A stretch of 64,000 nucleotides of DNA from the NCBI RefSeq assembly GCF_963853765.1, contig NC_088854.1, forward strand, positions 45,632,001-45,696,000. Reading direction: 5' to 3'. Shown here in pieces: positions 189 to 12,645 of the stretch. How positions within the stretch are numbered: position 1 is the stretch's first letter; every line of letters begins with the position of its first letter. The notes beneath the pieces were generated by a model. The model ran no database searches and was not told where the DNA came from. It saw only the letters and a program-made list of their open reading frames with translations. The stretch comes from Magallana gigas. Taxonomy: Eukaryota. The position numbers and the translations under genes are program-made.

Positions 189-3100
189 AGCCAAATTTGA
201 TATTTTGCATTTTTTAAAAACTTTTCTTTCACATAATTAGCACCAAAATCTACATCAGAAAAAGTGGAAATCAAGAAAAATATGGACATGAACAAAACAT
301 CTGAGTCTTATCAACTTGGACACACAAACAGAAGAGGAAAGAATGTATTAAAAACAAATACTACATTATAATATGAACAGATAATTCACTATTTTCTGAA
401 AATCTTCATGGTAAAATTTTCATTTGACAATCTTTAAAAATGAACATAATTATTTATTACAAACAAATGATGTACTTATTAAAATCAAATACAATTGGGT
501 TTTGAATATTTTTTAATTCAATTCTTATCTTTGAAGAAGCTGCCAACCAAAACGAAATTGACTTAACAATGTATGCGTTGCTACGTTAAAAAAGTAATGG
601 TAACAATTATTTTTGATTACAATGTTTAAGCGAAGGGAGAATTAAAATTATTTAAATCTTATTGTAAATAAGTTAAACGTTTTGTCACGATACCCAAAGA
701 AGCATCCGCCATTTATCAGACAATACCACATATCTCTTCTATTTGTATATTTAATGGGAAAAGGTCCAACGAGCATTTTCATTTGTGTTACTTGGTACGA
801 TACTTTCAAGAGGACAAAGAATAATAAGGTAAACGCAAACAACTGACTGAATTAAATTAGAACTCATTAGCCAAAACACGGTGCCAACTTTTTACAAGTA
901 TAACTTTATTTCAAAAGAATTCTTCTAACTTAAAAGATAATACTGCAAAAGTAGCGAGATAAGCAAATGTTATTCTACAGTGGCCCAGATAAAGCTTAAA
1001 TGGGTGCTAAAATAAGGATGTCTCTCGATACTATTTTGGTTTTATTTGAAAAGTTGCTGTAAAAGCAAGCAAATAAAAGTAAAATTAAGGATGATTTTTT
1101 TAAGTTTATGATAAAAAAAAAGTTTTGCTGTAAACATAAACATTGTATAATTTTCATTTCTTGAAATTTGCAATGTTACTGAACCTTGAAAATAAATACA
1201 CATTGTGTCTGTGTTATTTTTTAAAAGCTACATATAGGTCTATTTGTTTCAATACAGCCACATTTAGGTGTCACTGTTTAAATACATGCGCGCCTACAAA
1301 CAATATTTTACCTAGCATATTTACTCAAAGGACATTAATTCATTGTATATTAATGAATTCATACTGTATATACTGTTTTCTTAGTAAGAACTCAATAAGC
1401 TTTCGTGATGTGTTCGTGATCATTTAAATGACGAATAGAAGAATTTATCTATAAAGAATGTAGATGGTCATGGTCATTTTTAGGCTTAGTTAAGTTAAAA
1501 AGATGAAGAGCTTTTTAGAAAAATATAGGGAAAAATTCAAATTTTAAAGTTAACATATAGATTTTCCAACTACAAAAGACTTTATGGATAGAGATACATG
1601 TACAATGGTTCCTTATTGAAAAGTTTAACGAAGATCTAATGGTTAATTTGTTAACAACCCAGTCTCTCGAACAAAGATATGACATATTGAAACGATTACT
1701 TTTTCTATTGCAGGTACCAAATGTCTTGAATGTGGACAATGGCGGACAACTAAAAACGAGGCGATTCATAAAATGCATATTCTTTTGACTAACAGTACCA
1801 AAAGAATAAGAAATCTAATAAAAAAAAATGTGAACCATATCGTTTAAAACCCTGATGACTTAGTACAAAGTTCAGAATTATTTATGAACACAAAATCTAA
1901 TCAGAATGTATTTAACTTTTCTTTCAGAACATATCTCCATTTTGTGGAATAAATAAGATTTTCACCTCTCAATATTGTGTTTTTAAAAATGAAACATCAG
2001 TGTAATTGTTGAACAAAGATTGCTTTTCAATTATGAATCAGACTTAAATAAATTGCACTCTCACTTTATTCCTAACTATGCCATTGGCACTCAGTACTTG
2101 TACATATTTGACTGCACAGAGTGAATGTTTTCGTTGTAAAAAAGGATAATATATTGTAACACTTTACAAAGATTACTATCACATGTATAATAACTCAGAT
2201 AAAAACAGTTTGCAATGGAATGCAATCATAATTATAAATATTTATTAAAACTCTGTTGATCAACATGAAAGGGAAGCAACTCCCCTTTATAATTGCAGTT
2301 GAAAATGCCCCAAAAGAGTTGTCACTCGTTTCATCGATAATGAGAATGAAGTACAAAGAAAAATATGCTAGATTCATAAGTCTCTTTACGGCAGGATACA
2401 TTTTCAATGTTCGTCTCCGAAATGAAACTTTATAAAACATGATTTACCTATAAAATGTTTAAATTTCGAAACAGATGCATGGTAATATTCTCCAATAACA
2501 TGTGGAAAAAATCATCTGAAACAATTCAGAAAAAAACCAACCTCAGACATGCTTTTAGTTACTGCTTTAGCGTCTTGAAAAATGTTCTGTGCATATATAG
2601 ACAGGAAACAAGGGTCACTTTTTTCAGTCTGCTTGTTGAACGCGAGCCAAGGAATAAAAAAAAAACACATGTAACATCTAAAACCAGTTTGCGTTTCTAT
2701 ATTAAGCGCCACCCAATTTTAAAAACCTAATTCATTCATAAAACAATAAATGTAGGTCTCTTGGCGTCAAGGAAATCAAGATGTGATGCCCCAAAAATAC
2801 ATGTGGATGTTTTCAAACAAGATTATACTTTTTTGTCCACATTAACTTTGAGAAAAAGCTTTGCAAATATTCTTTTCAATGTATTCCTATGTAAAATCTT
2901 AATCTACCATTATGGGCCCTACCTAAAGTCCTGGATAATAGTAAACATTCTTGAATCTAAAGGAACTAAGGATGCTTCAAAACAAGTTTTTGCTTATACC
3001 TTATTTTGGCTAAATTGAATTTGAGAGGATATTGTTAAAGATAGCTTTTCTGTATTTTCTATGTAAGAATATTTATTCCCATTGTTGCCCAACTTTTCCC

Positions 3101-4399
3101 ATAAGGATAAGAACAAACTTAAATTAATACTATGTTGAGATGCTTCTTTTCCAAGTTACATTTTGTCTGACTTAATGCCTATTGTATATCTTTAAAGATT
3201 TTCCTTAAGCATTCACCTGGTAAAAACTTGCATTTTTGCCAAATCTACCTCTTGGGAGTCAGTTTTGGAAAAGAGAAAAATTACAAGAAAACACTGTTAA
3301 ATGATTCATTCATTAAAGTTTTTAGTTTTAAAGATAATGAAGAATTCTTTCATATATTCCTTCGTAAATATTTTTTACCTTTACACTTTTAATGTAACAA
3401 GTAAATCGTATATTTTTGCCTCATTACCATGGCAAAACTTGATTCTTCACTACCGGTTAATGCGGTAACATCAAAACAAGTTTCAGTGTTTCTGGTTTAC
3501 TACAAAAAATTTAAGATTATGAATTGCCATGTACCACTTATTCAAATTGTGATCCCAATCAGTCATAAAGTTCAACATTTGAACAAACATAAATCTATCT
3601 ACCTGAGGATTCTCCAGACAAAGCTGCATCTTTTGTGGTCGAGTAGCTACATGTTGTTTTAGAAAAAAAAATCAGAAAATGCTTCTATCATATTTCAATA
3701 CAAAAATTTGATTCCTCATTGGAACGCTACTCTACCCCCAGGAGATCATTATCTAAATAGAACTGAAATGACATAACTTGATTCTGCTGATGTTAGAAAA
3801 TTTATCCCTTCCTTATGATGTCTCTTTACAAGATTCAACTTCTGGGACCAAATAGCTTTTGTTCGAAAGATTTAAAAAAAAGGTGTATCATCACTTCCTT
3901 AGAATGCTTCTACACAAGATAATCTGAATTATACTGTGAACTTCTCTGATTACCTTTTGTCAAACGGCCATCATCTGTCTATATCTTTCTATATTGTCTG
4001 TCTATATTGGCTGGTTGTTTGGATGATGTTTGTCTGTCTGTTGAATTTTTACGTGGGATTAAATAGCAAAAATGCTGAAAATCCTCTAAAACTTCAGTAA
4101 GATCAAACTTGTGTGGATGCATCCAAAGGTAGTGTAGATATAGGTTCAAATTCAAAAAAGGGGATGGTTGGATTTTTACATAAAAAATGAATTGGGAATC
4201 ATCTTTCAAAATCTTTTCACTAAAACTGAAACAACCAAAGGAACTTGACAGTTTTGTATTCGATAGCATTAGTCAGATACGATCAGTTTTTCGTATACCT
4301 TTTGATGGCACAGATGTTAGTGCGAGGAGGTCATTGATGTTTGGGAGCAGGAGTGCCCGGCTCGCAGCGGTGATAAGCGCGAGTGTATTGTCCACTGAA
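189..4399. repeat. Segmental repeat, copy A (paralog of 16229-19810)
   Basis: Colinear match read by eye, e.g. ATAATTAGCACCAAAATCTACATCAGAAAA near 230 and near 16270, through to TTGTCCACTG at about 4399 and 19810. Roughly 90% identity by eye, with indels. Confidence 0.92.
2455..3018 (+). pseudogene. Relic reading frame of unknown protein (188 codons, one internal stop)
   Basis: ORFs 2455-2730 and 2761-3018 share one frame separated by a single TAA. A diverged homolog near 15715-15810 keeps FLCK....YYGP...SW with synonymous third-position changes. Confidence 0.4.
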
Positions 4400-4688
4400 C
4401 TATATTATAAATCACCGGTATATTTCTCTCTAAAAGAAGGTATTGGAACTAATCTCTCCTCCAAGCCAGTAAGAAAAAAAGCGACAAATATTACATGAAA
4501 TTTTATAAAATATCTATTTTTATACACGTTTGCAAAGTAAATACATGTATGTTCATAAAACTGTACCAATGTATCGTCGGGAAAATTCTGTTAAATTATA
4601 TATACATTGTATATTTTTAACATTAAATGTGTCCATCAGAAATCAAACAATGATAACGACGAAGTTCTACGTCAGGGATCCGCTACGT
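2967..4688. repeat. 1.72-kb direct duplication, left copy (matches 7378-9101)
   Basis: Near-identical sequence at offset +4411/+4413 with only about a dozen differences. The ORF track repeats the same ORFs (3429/7840, 3979/8392, 4187/8600). Confidence 0.97.
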
Positions 4689-4690
4689 CA

Positions 4691-5461
4691 CACTACTGGC
4701 TCTAAAAACCCCTGTCCGTATGAAAATCCCCTGTCTTCCCCTGTCACCCCCTGTGTTTTCACTGTCATCCCCTGCACATCCCCTGTGTGCCACTGTACAG
4801 AGCCCCTGTATACCCTGTCATCCCCTGTGCGCCCCTGTACATATCCCCCTGTGTGCCACTGTAAGCCCCTGTCACCCACTGTACGCCCCTGTCATCCCCT
4901 GTAAGCCACTGTATGCCCCTGTGCATGCCCCTAACATCCCCTGTACGGCTTTTGAGTGGGGTTTTTTTTCAATATCATTTTCGTAATGCAACTATTGAAA
5001 TCACATGTGTTCTATTTTGAGCTATAAGTCAATATTTGCACTCAACAGCGCCGAAGCACAAGACACACTGTTATCTTAATTTTAGAAATCACATGTTTTA
5101 GTTGATAATTTATTGATACTTTATTAATTTCCCGTGAATAGCAAAATAAAGCTTCAATAGCTTATATAAGTTTGTCTCAGAAATATTTTAGTATGTTTGT
5201 TCAATACGTTTCTGACCGGCTTATTGGACTCTTGAATTGAATTTAAACTGATGTTTTAATCTCATAATCAATTTCATTTATTTCCAAAATCTAATTGTTA
5301 TATCTCTTTTTACTGCAAAGTGGAAGATATCAAAGATAATTTAATTAATTGCCAGTGAACAGAAATCTGCCGTAAAGGTCAGAAAATGTAAATGTGTTTT
5401 CTATACATGTAGGAGGTTTTATAGATATTGAGATATTTAAAAAAAAAAAACCTGATTAGTC

Positions 5462-5524
<63 letters not shown>

Positions 5525-7377
5525 CATTGACTTTGAATTAAATTTATTAATTATATAGTTTACCCGGGAATTAATTTCCTAATAAGTAAACATGCAATCC
5601 TAATAGTTATTACCTATTCTTTATCATTCCGCTGCCCTGGTCAGAACATACACAACATAAATGTAAATGTAGAACTAGTGTTTGCTATACATGTAGCCTA
5701 TGGAGTTTATACAGAGAGAGAGAGAGAGAGAGAGAGATTGCACTGATTTTTAATTAAATGTTACTAATAGTTTAACCGGGAATTAATTTCTTAATAAGGA
5801 AACATGCAATCCTTATTAACTTTCATAACCAATTTTCTATAATTATTTAGATTAACTTAGAGCTGTCAAAGTGATGTTTAATTCATCAATGTTTTATGCT
5901 ACTCAAGATCAATTGATCAAAAACTTGAAGACACATGATTAACAACTAGCTGATTGAAGCTACAGATTTCAAAGGAGATGATGTTGACATTATTTCACTC
6001 GGTCAGTGATTATATAATAGCTACTGTACACAGCCCTTCTTGACAATTTGCAGTTCACGGTAGCGAGATAGGGAAAAAGAGATGATAGACACAGGTGTAC
6101 ACGTATATATACACACCCTTCCTCAGATCTGAATGGTCGGTCAGTGATTATATAATAGCTATTTACTGTATACAGCCCTTCTTAACAATTTGCAGTGCAC
6201 GGTAGCGAGACTGGGAACAATGAGGTGACAGACACATGTCCTCGATCAGGTCTGGATGCTCGGTAATGCTACACAATATTGCAATATGTTGTTTAACACC
6301 CCTTATGACCTTTTCCCCAGTCTGTCAAGTAAAGAAACACGCAATTGAAAATTTCAATTTTTCAGTTCTGAGAATTTTAAACATGAAAAAATTGAAGAGC
6401 TTAAAATTCATAACATTATTTGGCACAGTGATATGAATTAAAACTGTATATTGCTCTTTTATATTTTTCATTTTTCAAATAAAATCAAATTTAAATAAAT
6501 GTCTGATATTGTTCTGATCCGAAATCCGGACCATTGTTTAATATAATGCATGTGTGTATAATTAAATGGTACCCCGTTACCGGCATTTGCATACATTCAT
6601 GCATGCATGATTTATAAAAAACAATACTGACAGCAATTATCAGCGATTTACATGAACTTCATAAAGGCTGTTTAATTCTATGCATCATTACACTGGTCAA
6701 AACAGTCAAAATATAGGTGATCATGTCATCATTTCGATCGGTGTGTGGTTATCTGCACGTACTGATGTTGTGTTATTATGCGCTTTATCTCAGTCAGGTT
6801 ACATGGCACAGAACATTGCAGATTTCACGCACTCCTCCACTTATTTTTCTTTCTTTTTTTCTTTCTGTTTTATTTTTACAAATTACAGAACATGGTCATT
6901 TGTTTAAATGCATGTAATAAAATAAGCGATTTATCGGTATACAAGTATATCTTGATTTGTGTCAATGTTAAGTCAAAATTATTCACGCTTGTAATAATAT
7001 TGCCCTTTATGAAATGCAAAGAAAAACAAGCATCGTCTAAAACTTGAATGCTATATATAATTTTTTTAAAAATCCGAATTAATTAAAAACTTTTTTTTTT
7101 ACTTAGCGAGCAGTTAAAGTCCGTACAGGGGATGTCAGGGGCATGCACAGGGGCAGACAGTGGCTTACAGGGGATGACAGGGGCGTACAGTGGGTGACAG
7201 GGGCTTACAGTGGCACACAGGGGTTGTGTACAGGGGCGCACAGGGGATGACAGGGTATACAGGGGCTCTGTACAGTGGCACACAGGGGATGTACAGGGGA
7301 TGACAGTGAAAACACAGGGGGTGACAGGGGAAGACAGGGGATTTTCATACGGACAGGGGTTTTTAGAGCCAGTAGTG
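4691..7377. mobile_element. Non-autonomous DNA transposon with about 258-bp TIRs and CACTAC...GTAGTG termini (CACTA/EnSpm-like, foldback-type)
   Basis: 4691-4948 is the reverse complement of 7121-7377. The TIRs begin CACTACTGGCTCTAAAAACCCCTGT and are built from CCCCTGT repeats. No transposase ORF inside. The interior has (GA)n tracts and internal tandem duplications (about 5460-5620/5710-5815; about 6000-6110/6138-6250). Confidence 0.85.
5462..5522. repeat. (GA)n microsatellite inside the TIR element (second tract about 5714-5737)
   Basis: Direct reading. Confidence 0.97.
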
Positions 7378-9101
7378 TAAGGGTGCTTCAAAACATGTTT
7401 TTGCTTATACCTTATTTTGGCTAAATTGAATTTGAGAGGATATTGTTAAAGATAGCTTTTCTGTATTTTCTATGTAAGAATATTTATTCCCATTGTTGCC
7501 CAACTTTTCCCATAAGGATAAGAACAAACTTAAATTAATACTATGTTGAGATGCTTCTTTTCCAAGTTACATTTTGTCTGACTTAATGCCTATTTTATAT
7601 CTTTAAAGATTTTCCTTAAGCATTCACCTGGTAAAAACTTGCATTTTTGCCAAATCTACCTCTTGGGAGTCAGTTTTGGAAAAGAGAAAAATTATAAGAA
7701 AACACTGTTAAATGATTCATTCATTAAAGTTTTTAGTTTTAAAGATAATGAAGAATTCTTTCATATATTCCTTCGTAAATATTTTTTACCTTTACACTTT
7801 TAATGTAACAAGTAAATCGTATATTTTTGCCTCATTACCATGGCAAAACTTGATTCTTCACTACCTGTTAATGCGGTAACATCAAAACAAGTTTCAGTTT
7901 TTCTGGTTTACTACAAAAAATTTAAGATTATGAATTGCCATGTACCACTTATTCAAATTGTGATCCCAATCAGTCATAAAGTTCAACATTTGAACAAACA
8001 TAAATCTATCTACCTGAGGATTCTCCAGACAAAGCTGCATCTTTTGTGGTCGAGTAGCTACATGTTGTTTTAGAAAAAAAAATCAGAAAATGCTTCTATT
8101 ATATTTCAATACAAAAATTTGATTCCTCTTTGGAACGCTACTCTACCCCCAGGAGATCATTATCTAAATAGAACTGAAATGACATTACTTGATTCTGCTG
8201 ATGTTAGAAAATTTATCCCTTCCATATGATGTCTCTTTACAAGATTCAACTTCTGGGACCAAATAGCTTTTGTTCGAAAGATTTAAAAAAAAAAGGTGAA
8301 TCATCACTTCCTTAGAATGCTTCCACACAAGATAATCTGAATTATACTGTGAACTTCTCTGATTACCTTTTGTCAAACGGCCATCATCTGTCTATATCTT
8401 TCTATATTGTCTGTCTATATTGGCTGGTTGTTTGGATGATGTTTGTCTGTCTGTTGAATTTTTACGTGGGATTAAATAGCAAAAATGCTGAAAATCCTCT
8501 AAAACTTCAGTAAGATCAAACTTGTGTGGATGCATCCAAAGGTAGTGTAGATATAGGTTCAAATTCAAAAAAGGGGATGGTTGGATTTTTACATAAAAAA
8601 TGAATTGGGAATCATCTTTCAAAATCTTTTCACTAAAACTGAAACAACCAAAGGAACTTGACAGTTTTGTATTCGATAGCATTAGTCAGATACGATCAGT
8701 TTTTCGTATACCTTTTGATGGCACAGATGTTAGTGCGAGGAGGTCATTGATGTTTGGGAGCAGGAGTGCCCGGCTCGCAGCGGTGATAAGCGCGAGTGTA
8801 TTGTCCACTGAACTATATTATAAATCACCGGTATATTTCTCTCTAAAAGAAGGTATTGGAACTAATCTCTCCTCCAAGCCAGTAAGAAAAAAAGCGACAA
8901 ATATTACATGAAATTTTATAAAATATCTATTTTTATACACGTTTGCAAAGTAAATACATGTATGTTCATAAAACTGTACCAATGTATCGTCGGGAAAATT
9001 CTGTTAAATTATATATACATTGTATATTTTTAACATTAAATGTGTCCATCAGAAATCAAACAATGATAACGACGAAGTTCTACGTCAGGGATCCGCTACG
9101 T
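7378..9101. repeat. 1.72-kb direct duplication, right copy (matches 2967-4688)
   Basis: Starts at the first base after the right TIR (TAAGG[G/A]TGCTTCAAAAC) and ends at GGGATCCGCTACGT, like the left copy. Confidence 0.97.
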
Positions 9102-10534
9102 GATCAGTAATACATGTATATCTTAAATGCATATTTTTTAAAGTGAAAAATCAGATTTCATATATAAACTTAATTTTGTTTTATATTTACGCAAACCGCT
9201 TTTGAGAATTTGTTTGTCAAAACATTTCATTTTTATTTCATTTCTTTAATTACTTCGACTCTAATTAAAAACTTTAAAAACTGTATTGTACATATATTAC
9301 GACTAAGACGTGGACAATCATTTACAAATATAAATTTGGTACTCTTAAATCTGTAATATAAGACTGTCGAAGCGCCTTAATGTTTAGAATAGTATCATTT
9401 CTGCCTATTCATATTGAAGGGCGCTGTTCAAGCAAATAAACAAAGTACTTACAAGACTACTAACACTAGTGTACTACCAGTTGAAATATCTGCAAGGTTT
9501 AAGGAACAACACCATGATATAGACAGAAAAACCATATTATGTGCTTTTTTTAAACACGCACATAATTGGAAAAACGCAATTGGTTTTCAAAAACTAACAT
9601 TGAACACATTACATAAGACCCCTGTCATAGTCTTTATATCAAACTGTTTGTGATGCAGATCTATTTACTGACATTATCTTTTTTGTGTTGGTATCACTCA
9701 ACCAATTATGAACATGCTATTTTTATATTAACATCAACGATGTAAAAAAAATAATAACCTGTGATTCGAAATACGTTGAACGATTCGAAATATGACTAGT
9801 TTCTTCAATAATCAATGTTATTAAAGGAAATATAAAAAAAAACATGCCGACTGTGGTATTTTATCACGACCTTTTCAATGTCTATATTTGCCTCAAGTTG
9901 AGCAACATGTTGTACATGTACTTCGAAACACAGTGTTTACATAAGACATAACGTATAAATATTTTATAATCTTAAACATGTACGAACGGTTCTTTTAATG
10001 ATGTCAGGTAAATTTGCAAAATCTTGAAAAATTCTTCTGTTGCTGTCTTTTATTGCTTGAAAAAGATACTGAAAGTTAAAAAAATCAGAAACTATAATTT
10101 TTTATAGAAATGTGGGTACGTATGTGTGAGTGAAAGTGTAAAACATTTCCTTCAAGGTTTATTATGAAGAATAATCACAACAATTTTTCATAAATGGGTA
10201 TATGTTATAATGTTAATCATCAAGTGTTATTTCCCCCCATCAAAATGCTATTTAACTCAACAAAATAAGTCCTGGTTTTAACATGCAACGATCGATAAAG
10301 TATTGAATGAGTATTGAATTTTATTTTGCGTCACACAGTTTAACTGGTACAGTCAATGGTTGACGACAGGATCTGTTTAGACACATTCACAAATAGTTCA
10401 GGTCTGATGAAAACGTTTGGATTTATCTTTACAATTTCAGAAAATTAAGGAAATATATATGAAATTGTGAACTTGAAACAAAAGAGACCACATAGTCTGT
10501 GTCATCTGTTTCATATTTGGATATTTTACTGGAG

Positions 10535-11105: not shown

Positions 11106-11999
11106 TTTTTTTCATACTCCCTTATATTGTAAGAGGAACTGTATCACAACTACATAAGTAGTTTAAGTAAGTAGTTTATTAACTTGACAAAACTTTTTCT
11201 ATAAATGATATATATTTGGTCTTCATAAGAAGACTTTTTTCAGGATTCTTCAAAAGTATGCCCCTTTCTTTAACTTAGAATTCATGATCATGCTGTAGTA
11301 CAGATTGAATCTGCAAATAAAAATCAATATGCTTCGATACATTCGATGGTGCTGCTCTTATTACACCATCTCATTCATCCTTACTAAACAGACAATATTC
11401 CAGGGTGTTTTCAGCAGAAAGCTTATTGCCAATAACACAAAAATTTGGCATCATTTTACATCAATAATTGATGTTCACAGAAATATTAGATGAGCAGCAG
11501 GACAGTCTTCAGAGATACAAATAACACAATCATGCAATTGATGAATGTTTATTTTATGTGTGTAATTGTCAAATTCACACCAGTACAATATTCTTAAATA
11601 GAAGTATAAACATGAACAAAAATTATAAACCAACTATAGATCTTTGAAGCTAAAAAGCAGGTTAATTTTTTTTTCAAATGCTACATCATTACATATTTGT
11701 TTCTGTTTAATTTTGCATCTAATCTGTGTTGTTGTTATAGCGATTTGATGTTTTCAATTCCAGCGGGTAATTTATTGGGGTTTTTTATCACAGAACTGGA
11801 TGGTCATGTTCCAAGGATGGAAAACATTAGATGTACCACGGCACTGAAATGGTACCCAAAAAGGTGAGGCTCAGTAAAGGCAAAATCCAGAGAGAAAGAT
11901 AGAGAGTGGCAGGGGAAAGAGGTGTATTATTGTCTAATGCACTAGTTGATAGGTTATGTTAAAGCGATCGGCAAGACATGACATCTATGATCTATTGAT

Positions 12000-12497
12000 T
12001 GTTTACTAGTCTTGAAGTAAATGAAGTTCCTGTTCTTCAATGACTACTGAACATAAATTCGATTCTAAAAAGGTGAACTTAAGTTTTGTCTTAAGATTAC
12101 GAGATGTTTTTTGACACACGGGTAGCACTCTGGAACTTAAATCCATATATAACATCCGGTCATCGTTTTAAAAAAAAATACTTAAAAACTGGTAATAACA
12201 ATGCCTCTCCATTCTCTACCAAGTAGCGAAGAAGTCTTTTCTCCAAATCTTGTTTACTAGTCTTGAAGTATATGAAGTTCCTGTACTTCAATGACTACTG
12301 AACACAAATTCGATGCTAAAAAGGTGAACTTAAGTTTGATCTAAAGATTATCGAGTTGTTTCTTGACACACGGGTAGCCCTCTGGAACTTAAATCAATAT
12401 ATAACATCCGATCATCGGTTTCCAAAAAATACTGAACAACTGGTAATAACAATGCCTCTCTATTCTCTACCAAAGTAGCGAAGAAGTATTTCCTCCA
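12000..12497. repeat. Tandem repeat, about 251-bp unit, two copies running into an assembly gap
   Basis: TGTTTACTAGTCTTGAAGTA at 12000 and 12251. The second copy is cut by the N run. Confidence 0.93.
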
Positions 12498-12645
12498 NNN
12501 NNNNNNNNNNNNNNNNNNNNNNNNNNNNNNNNNNNNNNNNNNNNNNNNNNNNNNNNNNNNNNNNNNNNNNNNNNNNNNNNNNNNNNNNNNNNNNNNNNNN
12601 NNNNNNNNNNNNNNNNNNNNNNNNNNNNNNNNNNNNNNNNNNNNN
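12498..12645. other. Assembly gap (N run)
   Basis: About 148 N bases. Confidence 0.98.

What the first reader, a model, noticed from the sequence alone, without database searches (positions are those of the whole stretch)
2967..9101. Transposon set exactly between two 1.72-kb direct copies: possible hybrid-element-insertion footprint
Seen: [2967-4688]-CA-[TIR element 4691-7377]-[7378-9101]. The right copy starts at the first base after the right TIR with TA. The matching site in the left copy (AC-TA-AGG, 2967) is empty. The left copy stops 2 nt before the left TIR. The copies differ at only about a dozen positions. Known: P-element hybrid element insertion and Ac/Ds alternative transposition give flanking duplications with the element at the junction. 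Inference: the element sat at the TA, and ends from sister chromatids inserted 1.7 kb away on the homolog. The copies would then be two former alleles, making this a transposase-driven duplication in a mollusc. Unequal crossover between two insertions would give a similar structure.
Basis: partly seen in the sequence, partly recalled or inferred. Interest (0 to 1): 0.72.

Follow-up and report, generated by a model that had tools for sequence, protein, structure and literature searches.

The report
Transposon at a tandem-duplication joint
In the Pacific oyster genome, one non-coding CACTA-type transposon sits exactly at the joint of two 1.7-kb direct copies and carries flanks from two different target sites, which marks a transposon-made duplication of a kind known from flies and maize; I could not check it against reads.

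Summary
Window 2967-4690 and 7378-9103 are direct copies that differ by 13 substitutions and one 2-bp indel. A 2,687-bp element (4691-7377) fills the whole space between them.

The element is a non-autonomous CACTA/EnSpm-type transposon. It has CACTACTGG termini, TIRs of about 265 nt with 10-bp subterminal repeats, and no ORF of note. At least 152 matching termini occur in the genome. 18 of 19 other copies have a perfect 3-bp target-site duplication.

This copy does not: its flanks are TCA and TAA.
- TAA is the first triplet of both copies. The left copy holds it as an unoccupied site, identical to an older paralog in the window, with no excision footprint.
- TCA corresponds to TGA at the end of the right copy.

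One element with flanks from two sites 1.72 kb apart, and no element outside, indicates a transposon-mediated duplication (about 0.8). Hybrid-end transposition (about 0.40) and unequal crossover between two offset insertions (about 0.37) fit the sequence equally well. Assembly error is about 0.1. The event type is known; the host and transposon superfamily are new. The duplicated DNA is non-coding.

The parts
2967..4690 (+). Left copy of the duplicated segment (A), non-coding. It begins with the unoccupied target TAA and ends with TCA abutting the element.
   Evidence: no Pfam hit on its ORFs
2962..2975 (.). Site p1, unoccupied: GGAAC-TAA-GGATGC. It is identical to the older paralog at about 18478-18491, so it is ancestral and carries no excision footprint.
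4688..4690 (.). Left flanking triplet TCA. It corresponds to TGA at 9101-9103 (site p2), with one mismatch at 4689.
4691..7377 (.). Non-autonomous CACTA/EnSpm-type transposon, 2,687 bp, with termini CACTACTGG...CCAGTAGTG.
   Evidence: no ORF over 124 aa and no Pfam hit
4691..4958 (+). Left terminal inverted repeat, with about 15 subterminal CCCTGT-type repeats at 10-bp spacing.
   Evidence: I1, I2, D3
7111..7377 (-). Right terminal inverted repeat with the mirrored subterminal repeats. It is 97.3% like the left one.
   Evidence: (I1, I2, D4)
7378..7380 (.). Right flanking triplet TAA, the target triplet of site p1.
7378..9103 (+). Right copy of the duplicated segment (A'). It begins at the first base after the element and ends with the unoccupied site p2.
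9096..9109 (.). Site p2, unoccupied: CTACG-TGA-TCAGTA.
16229..19815 (+). Older paralog (85-89%) of window 189-4402. It runs uninterrupted through the equivalent of p1 and was used as outgroup.

Best explanation
This is a real tandem duplication of 1.72 kb of non-coding DNA, made by the transposon that sits at its joint (about 0.8 for a transposon-mediated origin overall). The mechanism I commit to is hybrid-end ('alternative') transposition of the hybrid-element-insertion type; the confidence given here (0.40) is for that mechanism. A non-autonomous CACTA element sat at TAA (site p1) on one chromosome. Transposase supplied in trans paired the left end of the copy on one chromatid with the right end of the copy on its sister. 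It cut both ends from their flanks and inserted the pair at T(G/C)A, 1.72 kb away (site p2), on the homolog that had never carried the element. The left end then became joined to U-A of the target chromosome. It still dragged its own element and the original A-D behind it, giving U-A-[element]-A-D. The reciprocal product would be U-[element]-D. The roles of p1 and p2 may be swapped, because the structure is symmetrical. Shown: the element's identity and exact ends, the family's 3-bp TSD, the non-matching flanks that each fit a different single-copy site, the flush copy ends, the footprint-free ancestral p1, and the absence of any second element. Inferred: that ends from two chromatids were used, that the target was the homolog, and that a transposase was active at the time.
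For: The copies are flush with the element ends. The family has a 3-bp TSD in 18 of 19 other copies, while this copy has TCA|TAA. TAA is the first triplet of both copies, and TCA aligns with TGA at the end of the right copy. Both triplets fit the family's T-N-A-rich target spectrum; TAA, TGA and TCA all occur among the other TSDs. The left U|A junction is identical to the in-window paralog over more than 35 bp, so there is no footprint. Only one pair of termini occurs in the 64-kb window. The segment A occurs only here, apart from old paralogs of 89% or less. The element's two TIRs are 97.3% alike, in the upper part of the family range of 78-98%, so they give no sign of a chimera of two diverged copies. 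No other copy in the genome is closer than about 92-96%, so a second, independently inserted and near-identical element at p2 is not an obvious expectation. The family clusters locally, for example a pair 3 kb apart on C3 with different TSDs, as expected for short-range movement. Transposase_21 (PF02992) reading frames of up to 1,028 aa without stops exist in the genome. Three of the 14 differences lie within 20 bp of the element ends (P about 0.004). The assembly is 48x HiFi with hifiasm, whose reads should span the 6.1-kb structure (PMC11267148). Hybrid-element insertion with flanking duplications is established for the P element, as summarised in PMC3744419 and PMC2775673.
Against: Unequal crossover between two offset insertions predicts exactly the same sequence. 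No reads, alternate haplotype or population data could be consulted, so neither the donor allele nor the reciprocal deletion is known. Hybrid-end transposition has not been reported for CACTA/EnSpm elements, and a literature search found no paper combining the terms. Insertion into the homolog needs homolog proximity, which is well known only in Diptera. The p2 triplet matches only 2 of 3 bases. No autonomous partner with these termini was found by coordinates. All other copies are at least 4% diverged, so recent activity of the family is not shown.
Confidence: 0.4

Rival explanations
1. Unequal homologous crossover. Two copies of the same element, in the same orientation, sat at p1 on one homolog (U-element-A-D) and at p2 on the other (U-A-element-D). 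An exchange inside the misaligned elements gave U-A-element-A-D, with flanks from the two sites, plus a reciprocal U-element-D.
For: It predicts every sequence feature seen: one element, none outside, flush copies, the left flank from p2 and the right flank from p1, and a clean p1 in the left copy. It uses ordinary meiotic exchange between homologs. This fits copies that look like two alleles: derived changes fall on both copies and divergence is 1.4% in the first 945 bp. Close pairs of this family exist (C3, 3 kb apart). Tandem arrays holding the element show that unequal exchange is active in this genome. Transposon insertion polymorphism is very common in oysters (bioRxiv 10.64898/2026.02.10.705023). 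Exchanged TSDs are the accepted mark of ectopic recombination (PMC2775673).
Against: It needs two steps and two near-identical insertions 1.7 kb apart, in the same orientation, on different haplotypes. Yet the nearest copy elsewhere in the genome is at least 4% different. The element shows no chimerism: its TIRs are 97.3% alike, near the top of the family range. That test is weak if one copy arose from the other by a local hop.
Confidence: 0.37
2. Assembly artefact. The animal is heterozygous for two arrangements, for example the element at p1 on one haplotype and at p2 on the other. The assembler walked from one haplotype into the other inside the identical element, creating a duplication that no molecule carries.
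For: The two copies look like alleles. Oysters are highly heterozygous, and curation of this assembly removed 68 haplotypic duplications (PMC11267148). No read evidence could be obtained.
Against: HiFi reads at 48x are far longer than the 2.7-kb element and the 6.1-kb structure, so overlaps confined to the element should lose to longer within-haplotype overlaps (inference from the method given in PMC11267148). No gap adjoins the structure; the only N run is 3.4 kb away, at 12498-12645. This is the only near-identical duplicate in the 64-kb window. The scenario still needs both offset insertions to exist.
Confidence: 0.1
3. Coincidence. An ordinary tandem duplication of A arose first by end joining or replication slippage. 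The transposon later inserted exactly at the joint, and one base of its TSD then mutated (TAA to TCA).
For: Ordinary tandem duplications not flush with element ends exist in this genome (C9, 5,855-bp period, breakpoint inside the element). One other copy also has a one-base TSD mismatch.
Against: The insertion would have to hit about 3 positions out of about 3,450. A post-duplication insertion should be young, yet no copy within 4% of this one exists in the genome. The left triplet also fits the p2 site equally well.
Confidence: 0.05
4. Reversed-ends transposition, or crossover between two elements on one chromosome, gave element-A-element-A (or three elements). The outer element(s) were later lost by excision.
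For: These are the documented routes in maize (PMC3744419).
Against: The outer junction U|A is identical to the paralog and has no footprint. No second element or solo end occurs in the window. Precise loss would be required.
Confidence: 0.03

Closest known systems
P-element hybrid element insertion in Drosophila (flanking duplications and deletions with male recombination; Gray, Tanaka & Sved 1996 and Preston, Sved & Engels 1996, cited from my own knowledge and from the reference lists of PMC2775673 and PMC3744419)
   Same: A single element is retained at the joint of a short flanking direct duplication. One flank is the original site and the other a nearby new target. No element lies at the outer ends. 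The span is of kb scale, and a reciprocal deletion is predicted.
   Different: The transposon superfamily differs (CACTA/EnSpm type with a 3-bp TSD, against P with 8 bp), as does the host (a bivalve). This is a natural allele of unknown age, not an event watched in a cross. The reciprocal product and the donor allele have not been seen.
Maize Ac/Ds alternative transposition giving tandem direct duplications (Zhang, Zuo & Peterson 2013, PMC3744419)
   Same: The duplication endpoints coincide precisely with transposon termini. The argument against ordinary NAHR is the same: no element at an outer breakpoint and no footprint.
   Different: The reversed-ends model needs two elements and leaves one at the start of each repeat (element-A-element-A). 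Here there is a single element between the copies, so that model is not met.
Galileo-mediated inversions in Drosophila buzzatii by ectopic recombination (PMC2775673)
   Same: Non-matching ('exchanged') TSDs, each corresponding to a single-copy target in the unrearranged sequence, are used as the mark of a transposon-mediated rearrangement. The same ambiguity arises between ectopic recombination and hybrid element insertion.
   Different: That case is an inversion between inverted copies, and it was resolved by showing chimeric elements. Here the product is a direct duplication and the chimerism test is uninformative.
CACTA/EnSpm (CMC) non-autonomous elements
   Same: CACTA termini, a 3-bp TSD, and long TIRs with short subterminal repeats.
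   Different: No transposase is present in this copy, and its autonomous partner was not identified.

Membership tests
CACTA/EnSpm (CMC) DNA transposon, non-autonomous member | Termini 5'-CACTA...TAGTG-3' within terminal inverted repeats | tested here: met
   CACTACTGG / CCAGTAGTG at 4691 and 7377, with arms of about 265 nt at 95-98%. The same ends occur in 18 other copies.
CACTA/EnSpm (CMC) DNA transposon, non-autonomous member | 3-bp target-site duplication | tested here: met
   18 of 19 other copies have identical flanking triplets, against a chance of about 0.02 each. This copy is the exception (TCA/TAA), which is the finding.
CACTA/EnSpm (CMC) DNA transposon, non-autonomous member | Arrays of short subterminal repeats | tested here: met
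   About 15 CCCTGT-type units at 10-bp spacing at each end (D3/D4).
CACTA/EnSpm (CMC) DNA transposon, non-autonomous member | DDE transposase (Transposase_21) in the element or supplied by a partner with the same ends | tested here: inconclusive
   This copy has no ORF of note and no Pfam hit. 35 PF02992 matches occur in the genome, with open frames of up to 1,028 aa. None lies between listed termini of this family, and only 100 of the 152 termini were listed.
Hybrid-end (HEI-type) transposition product | One element at the joint of two direct copies, with none at the outer ends | tested here: met
Hybrid-end (HEI-type) transposition product | Both copy boundaries coincide to the base with the element termini, and the two flanks belong to two different single-copy target sites | tested here: met
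   p1 TAA matches exactly; p2 TCA against TGA matches 2 of 3.
Hybrid-end (HEI-type) transposition product | A donor allele with the element at one site and a single copy of A, and a reciprocal deletion carrying the other half of the new TSD | not testable with these tools
Hybrid-end (HEI-type) transposition product | The element is not chimeric (both ends from the same insertion) | tested here: inconclusive
   The TIRs are 97.3% alike, near the top of the family range. No near-identical relatives exist against which to detect a switch.
Reversed-ends transposition duplication (maize Ac/fAc type) | Each repeat is initiated by an element (two elements), the first one with a full TSD | tested here: not met
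   There is a single element, and U|A is footprint-free and ancestral. Criteria are taken from PMC3744419.
NAHR between two elements on one chromosome | Three elements: one at each outer end and one at the joint | tested here: not met

The most novel reading that the evidence does not exclude
This locus is a natural footprint of hybrid-end (sister-chromatid ends) transposition by a CACTA/EnSpm-type element in an animal. It would show that transposases of this superfamily can pair ends from different chromatids and so create kb-scale tandem duplications in bivalve genomes. Together with an earlier, untested note from this scan (a Mutator-like element at every joint of a gene array in the same genome), it would suggest that transposase-driven duplication is a recurrent source of oyster tandem repeats.
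Probability: 0.4. Interest if true: 0.5.

Novelty: new member of a known kind. Interest (0 to 1): 0.38.

Why it matters
Tandem duplications are usually put down to unequal crossover or replication errors. Direct creation by transposases has been shown only in a few genetic systems (P element, Ac/Ds, Tam3). A clean natural example in a mollusc, made by a CACTA-type element, would extend that mechanism to another superfamily and phylum.

It also gives a simple search key for surveys of the structurally very variable bivalve genomes: an element whose two flanking triplets do not match, flush between direct copies, with no element outside.

The segment duplicated here is non-coding, so no functional consequence is apparent. 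The value lies in the mechanism.

Tried and rejected
**Reads and outside sequence**
The planned survey of all roughly 76 or more copies for other non-matching TSDs with flush duplications stopped at 19 copies.
- Junction-spanning ORF as a handle on other assemblies: the search for homologous proteins with window:4530-4901 gave only two transposon-derived hits and none with the junction.
- An exact-terminus scan of metagenome contigs gave 0 hits.

**Coding and RNA content**
- Coding content of A, of the element and of a neighbouring ORF: no Pfam hit.
- Rfam on window 1-22000: nothing.

**Tests on the element and the copies**
- Chimerism of the element, by TIR identity and by segment-wise nearest neighbour among 19 copies: no signal, but low power.
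- Autonomous partner, by intersecting PF02992 hits with terminus coordinates: none found.
- Polarity of the C/G difference at p2: no paralog covers p2.
- Gene conversion from the paralog as the source of the differences: the derived states are interleaved between the copies, with no tract.

**Rejected readings**
- LTR-like element: the interior is a complete TIR element with its own family.
- Composite or captured flanks: A occurs only at this locus.
Full report
**1. What is there**

Window 2967-4688 and 7378-9101 match at 99.2% over 1,724 columns. A global alignment lists every difference:
- 12 substitutions and one 2-bp indel between 2972 and 3911;
- nothing from 3912 to 4688;
- one further mismatch at 4689 (C) against 9102 (G).

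Outside these limits the two sides are unrelated. Between the copies lies a 2,687-bp element, 4691-7377. It has inverted arms 4690-4958 / 7111-7378 (95-98% complementary). Each end carries about 15 CCCTGT-type subterminal repeats spaced 10 bp apart. The window contains only this one pair of termini.

**2. What the element is**

Its terminal 300 bp finds at least 239 candidate places in the window's own genome. The 27-nt terminus occurs 152 times with up to 2 mismatches, against 0 for the reversed control. I fetched 18 complete copies.
- All begin CACTACTGG and end CCAGTAGTG.
- 17 of 18 are flanked by identical triplets. A 19th copy on C3 (TTA/TTA) makes it 18 of 19. A chance match would be about 0.02 per copy.

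CACTA termini, a 3-bp TSD and subterminal repeat arrays define a CACTA/EnSpm-type (CMC) element. This copy has no ORF over 124 aa and no Pfam hit, so it is non-autonomous. Transposase_21 (PF02992) frames of up to 1,028 aa without stops exist elsewhere in the genome. None lies between listed termini of this family, so the partner is unidentified. The observed TSDs are T-rich, often T-N-A: TAA, TAG, TCA, TGA, TTA, TAT.

**3. The key anomaly**

This copy's flanks are TCA (4688-4690) and TAA (7378-7380), which is not a duplication.
- TAA is the first triplet of both copies. In the left copy it sits in GGAAC-TAA-GGATGC with no element (site p1).
- TCA lines up with TGA (9101-9103) at the end of the right copy, where there is also no element (site p2).

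The duplicated unit therefore runs from the p1 triplet through the p2 triplet. Both copies are flush with the element.

**4. An outgroup inside the window**

Window 189-4402 has an older paralog at 16229-19815 (85-89%). It runs straight through the equivalent of p1 and is identical to the left copy for more than 35 bp around it. The U|A junction of the left copy is therefore the ancestral, never-disturbed or precisely restored state, with no excision footprint.

Polarised on the paralog, 7 events are derived in the left copy and 6 in the right, interleaved.

The differences are strongly clustered:
- 13 of 14 fall in the first 945 bp (1.4% there);
- the chance of a 778-bp gap is about 0.003;
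- 3 of 14 lie within 20 bp of the element ends (P about 0.004).

Uneven divergence with derived states on both sides is what two alleles with different local coalescence times look like. Conversion between paralogous copies could give the same pattern.

**5. Which genome**

A protein hit named Magallana gigas sits on a 76,070,991-bp contig. The scaffold sizes and the total of 564.0 Mb in 29 scaffolds match xbMagGiga1.1, GCA_963853765.1 (PMC11267148). The window lies on chromosome 2.

That assembly used 48x PacBio HiFi, hifiasm and purge_dups. HiFi reads should span a 6.1-kb structure. No gap touches it, and it is the only near-identical duplicate in the window. I put assembly error at about 0.1.

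**6. Mechanism**

One element at the joint, none outside, and flanks from two sites 1.72 kb apart exclude several routes:
- a simple insertion;
- the maize reversed-ends model, which leaves an element at the head of each repeat (PMC3744419);
- crossover between two elements on one chromosome, which leaves three elements;
- later loss of an outer element, which is disfavoured by the footprint-free U|A junction;
- insertion by chance into a pre-existing joint, which needs a hit on about 3 of about 3,450 positions and a young insertion, whereas no copy in the genome is closer than about 92-96% to this one.

Two routes remain, and they predict the same sequence.

(a) Hybrid-end transposition, as in P-element hybrid element insertion. 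The left end on one chromatid and the right end on its sister are used together. They insert nearby on the homolog, giving U-A-element-A-D and a reciprocal U-element-D.

(b) Unequal crossover inside two same-orientation copies, one sitting at p1 on one homolog and one at p2 on the other.

PMC2775673 describes this same ambiguity and resolves it by testing whether the element is chimeric. Here the TIRs are 97.3% alike, near the top of the family range of 78-98%. No segment of the element has a distinct nearest relative. That leans slightly to (a), or to two copies related by a local hop. Against that, (b) uses ordinary meiotic exchange between homologs. Close pairs and tandem arrays of this family also exist.

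I commit to (a) at about 0.40, with (b) at about 0.37.

**7. Novelty and weight**

Transposon-made flanking duplications are established in Drosophila and maize. I found no report for CACTA-type elements: 0 papers combine CACTA with sister chromatid transposition. A recent preprint describes pervasive transposon-linked structural variation in oysters, without this mechanism.

I did not test it, and I use it only as a lead that the pattern may recur.

The duplicated DNA is non-coding. This is a tidy new example of a known kind of event, unresolved between two mechanisms and unverified by reads.

Noticed in passing
window 189-4402 and 16229-19815: An older segmental duplication (85-89% identity), about 16 kb apart. 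Further diverged pieces lie upstream of the window on the same chromosome. 2365-2893 is present only in the first copy and matches a dispersed repeat.
   Followed up: partly
window 19811-19820: Homology of the paralog to segment A stops at 19815, exactly where CACTACTTGG begins. This may be the end of another CACTA-like element. No partner end was found in the window.
   Followed up: no
window 11999-12645: A 251-252-bp tandem repeat (units 90-94% alike) runs into the N run 12498-12645.
   Followed up: no
G000 C1:44,362,140-44,387,427 (L049, L050, L021-L023, L030): There are at least three 7.92-kb tandem units, 99.8% alike. Each holds a 3.8-kb copy of the same transposon family with the same TSD (TCT). 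A lone 260-bp TIR piece of a second copy lies near each unit start, and a full second copy follows the array.
   Followed up: partly
G000 C9:12,141,343-12,152,031 (L025, L029): A tandem duplication with a 5,855-bp period, 99.9% alike. One breakpoint lies inside the transposon, about 557 bp from its end. This is an ordinary duplication that is not flush with element ends, which makes it a useful contrast.
   Followed up: partly
G000 C3:56,994,995-57,004,183 (L037, L008): Two copies of the family lie in inverted orientation 3 kb apart, with different perfect TSDs (TAA and TTA). They are separate insertions, which suggests short-range movement.
   Followed up: partly
protein P0001 (chromosome 1 of the same genome): A 152-aa NCBI model named 'scavenger receptor class F member 2-like' matches the translated CCCTGT subterminal repeats of this transposon (73% identity over 32% of the query). 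It is probably a transposon-derived gene model.
   Followed up: no
window 5465-5533 and 5713-5740; 5497-5604/5713-5816; 5999-6096/6137-6239: Inside the element there are (AG)n runs and two short internal tandem duplications (86% alike). This copy is also 350-700 bp shorter than most family members.
   Followed up: no
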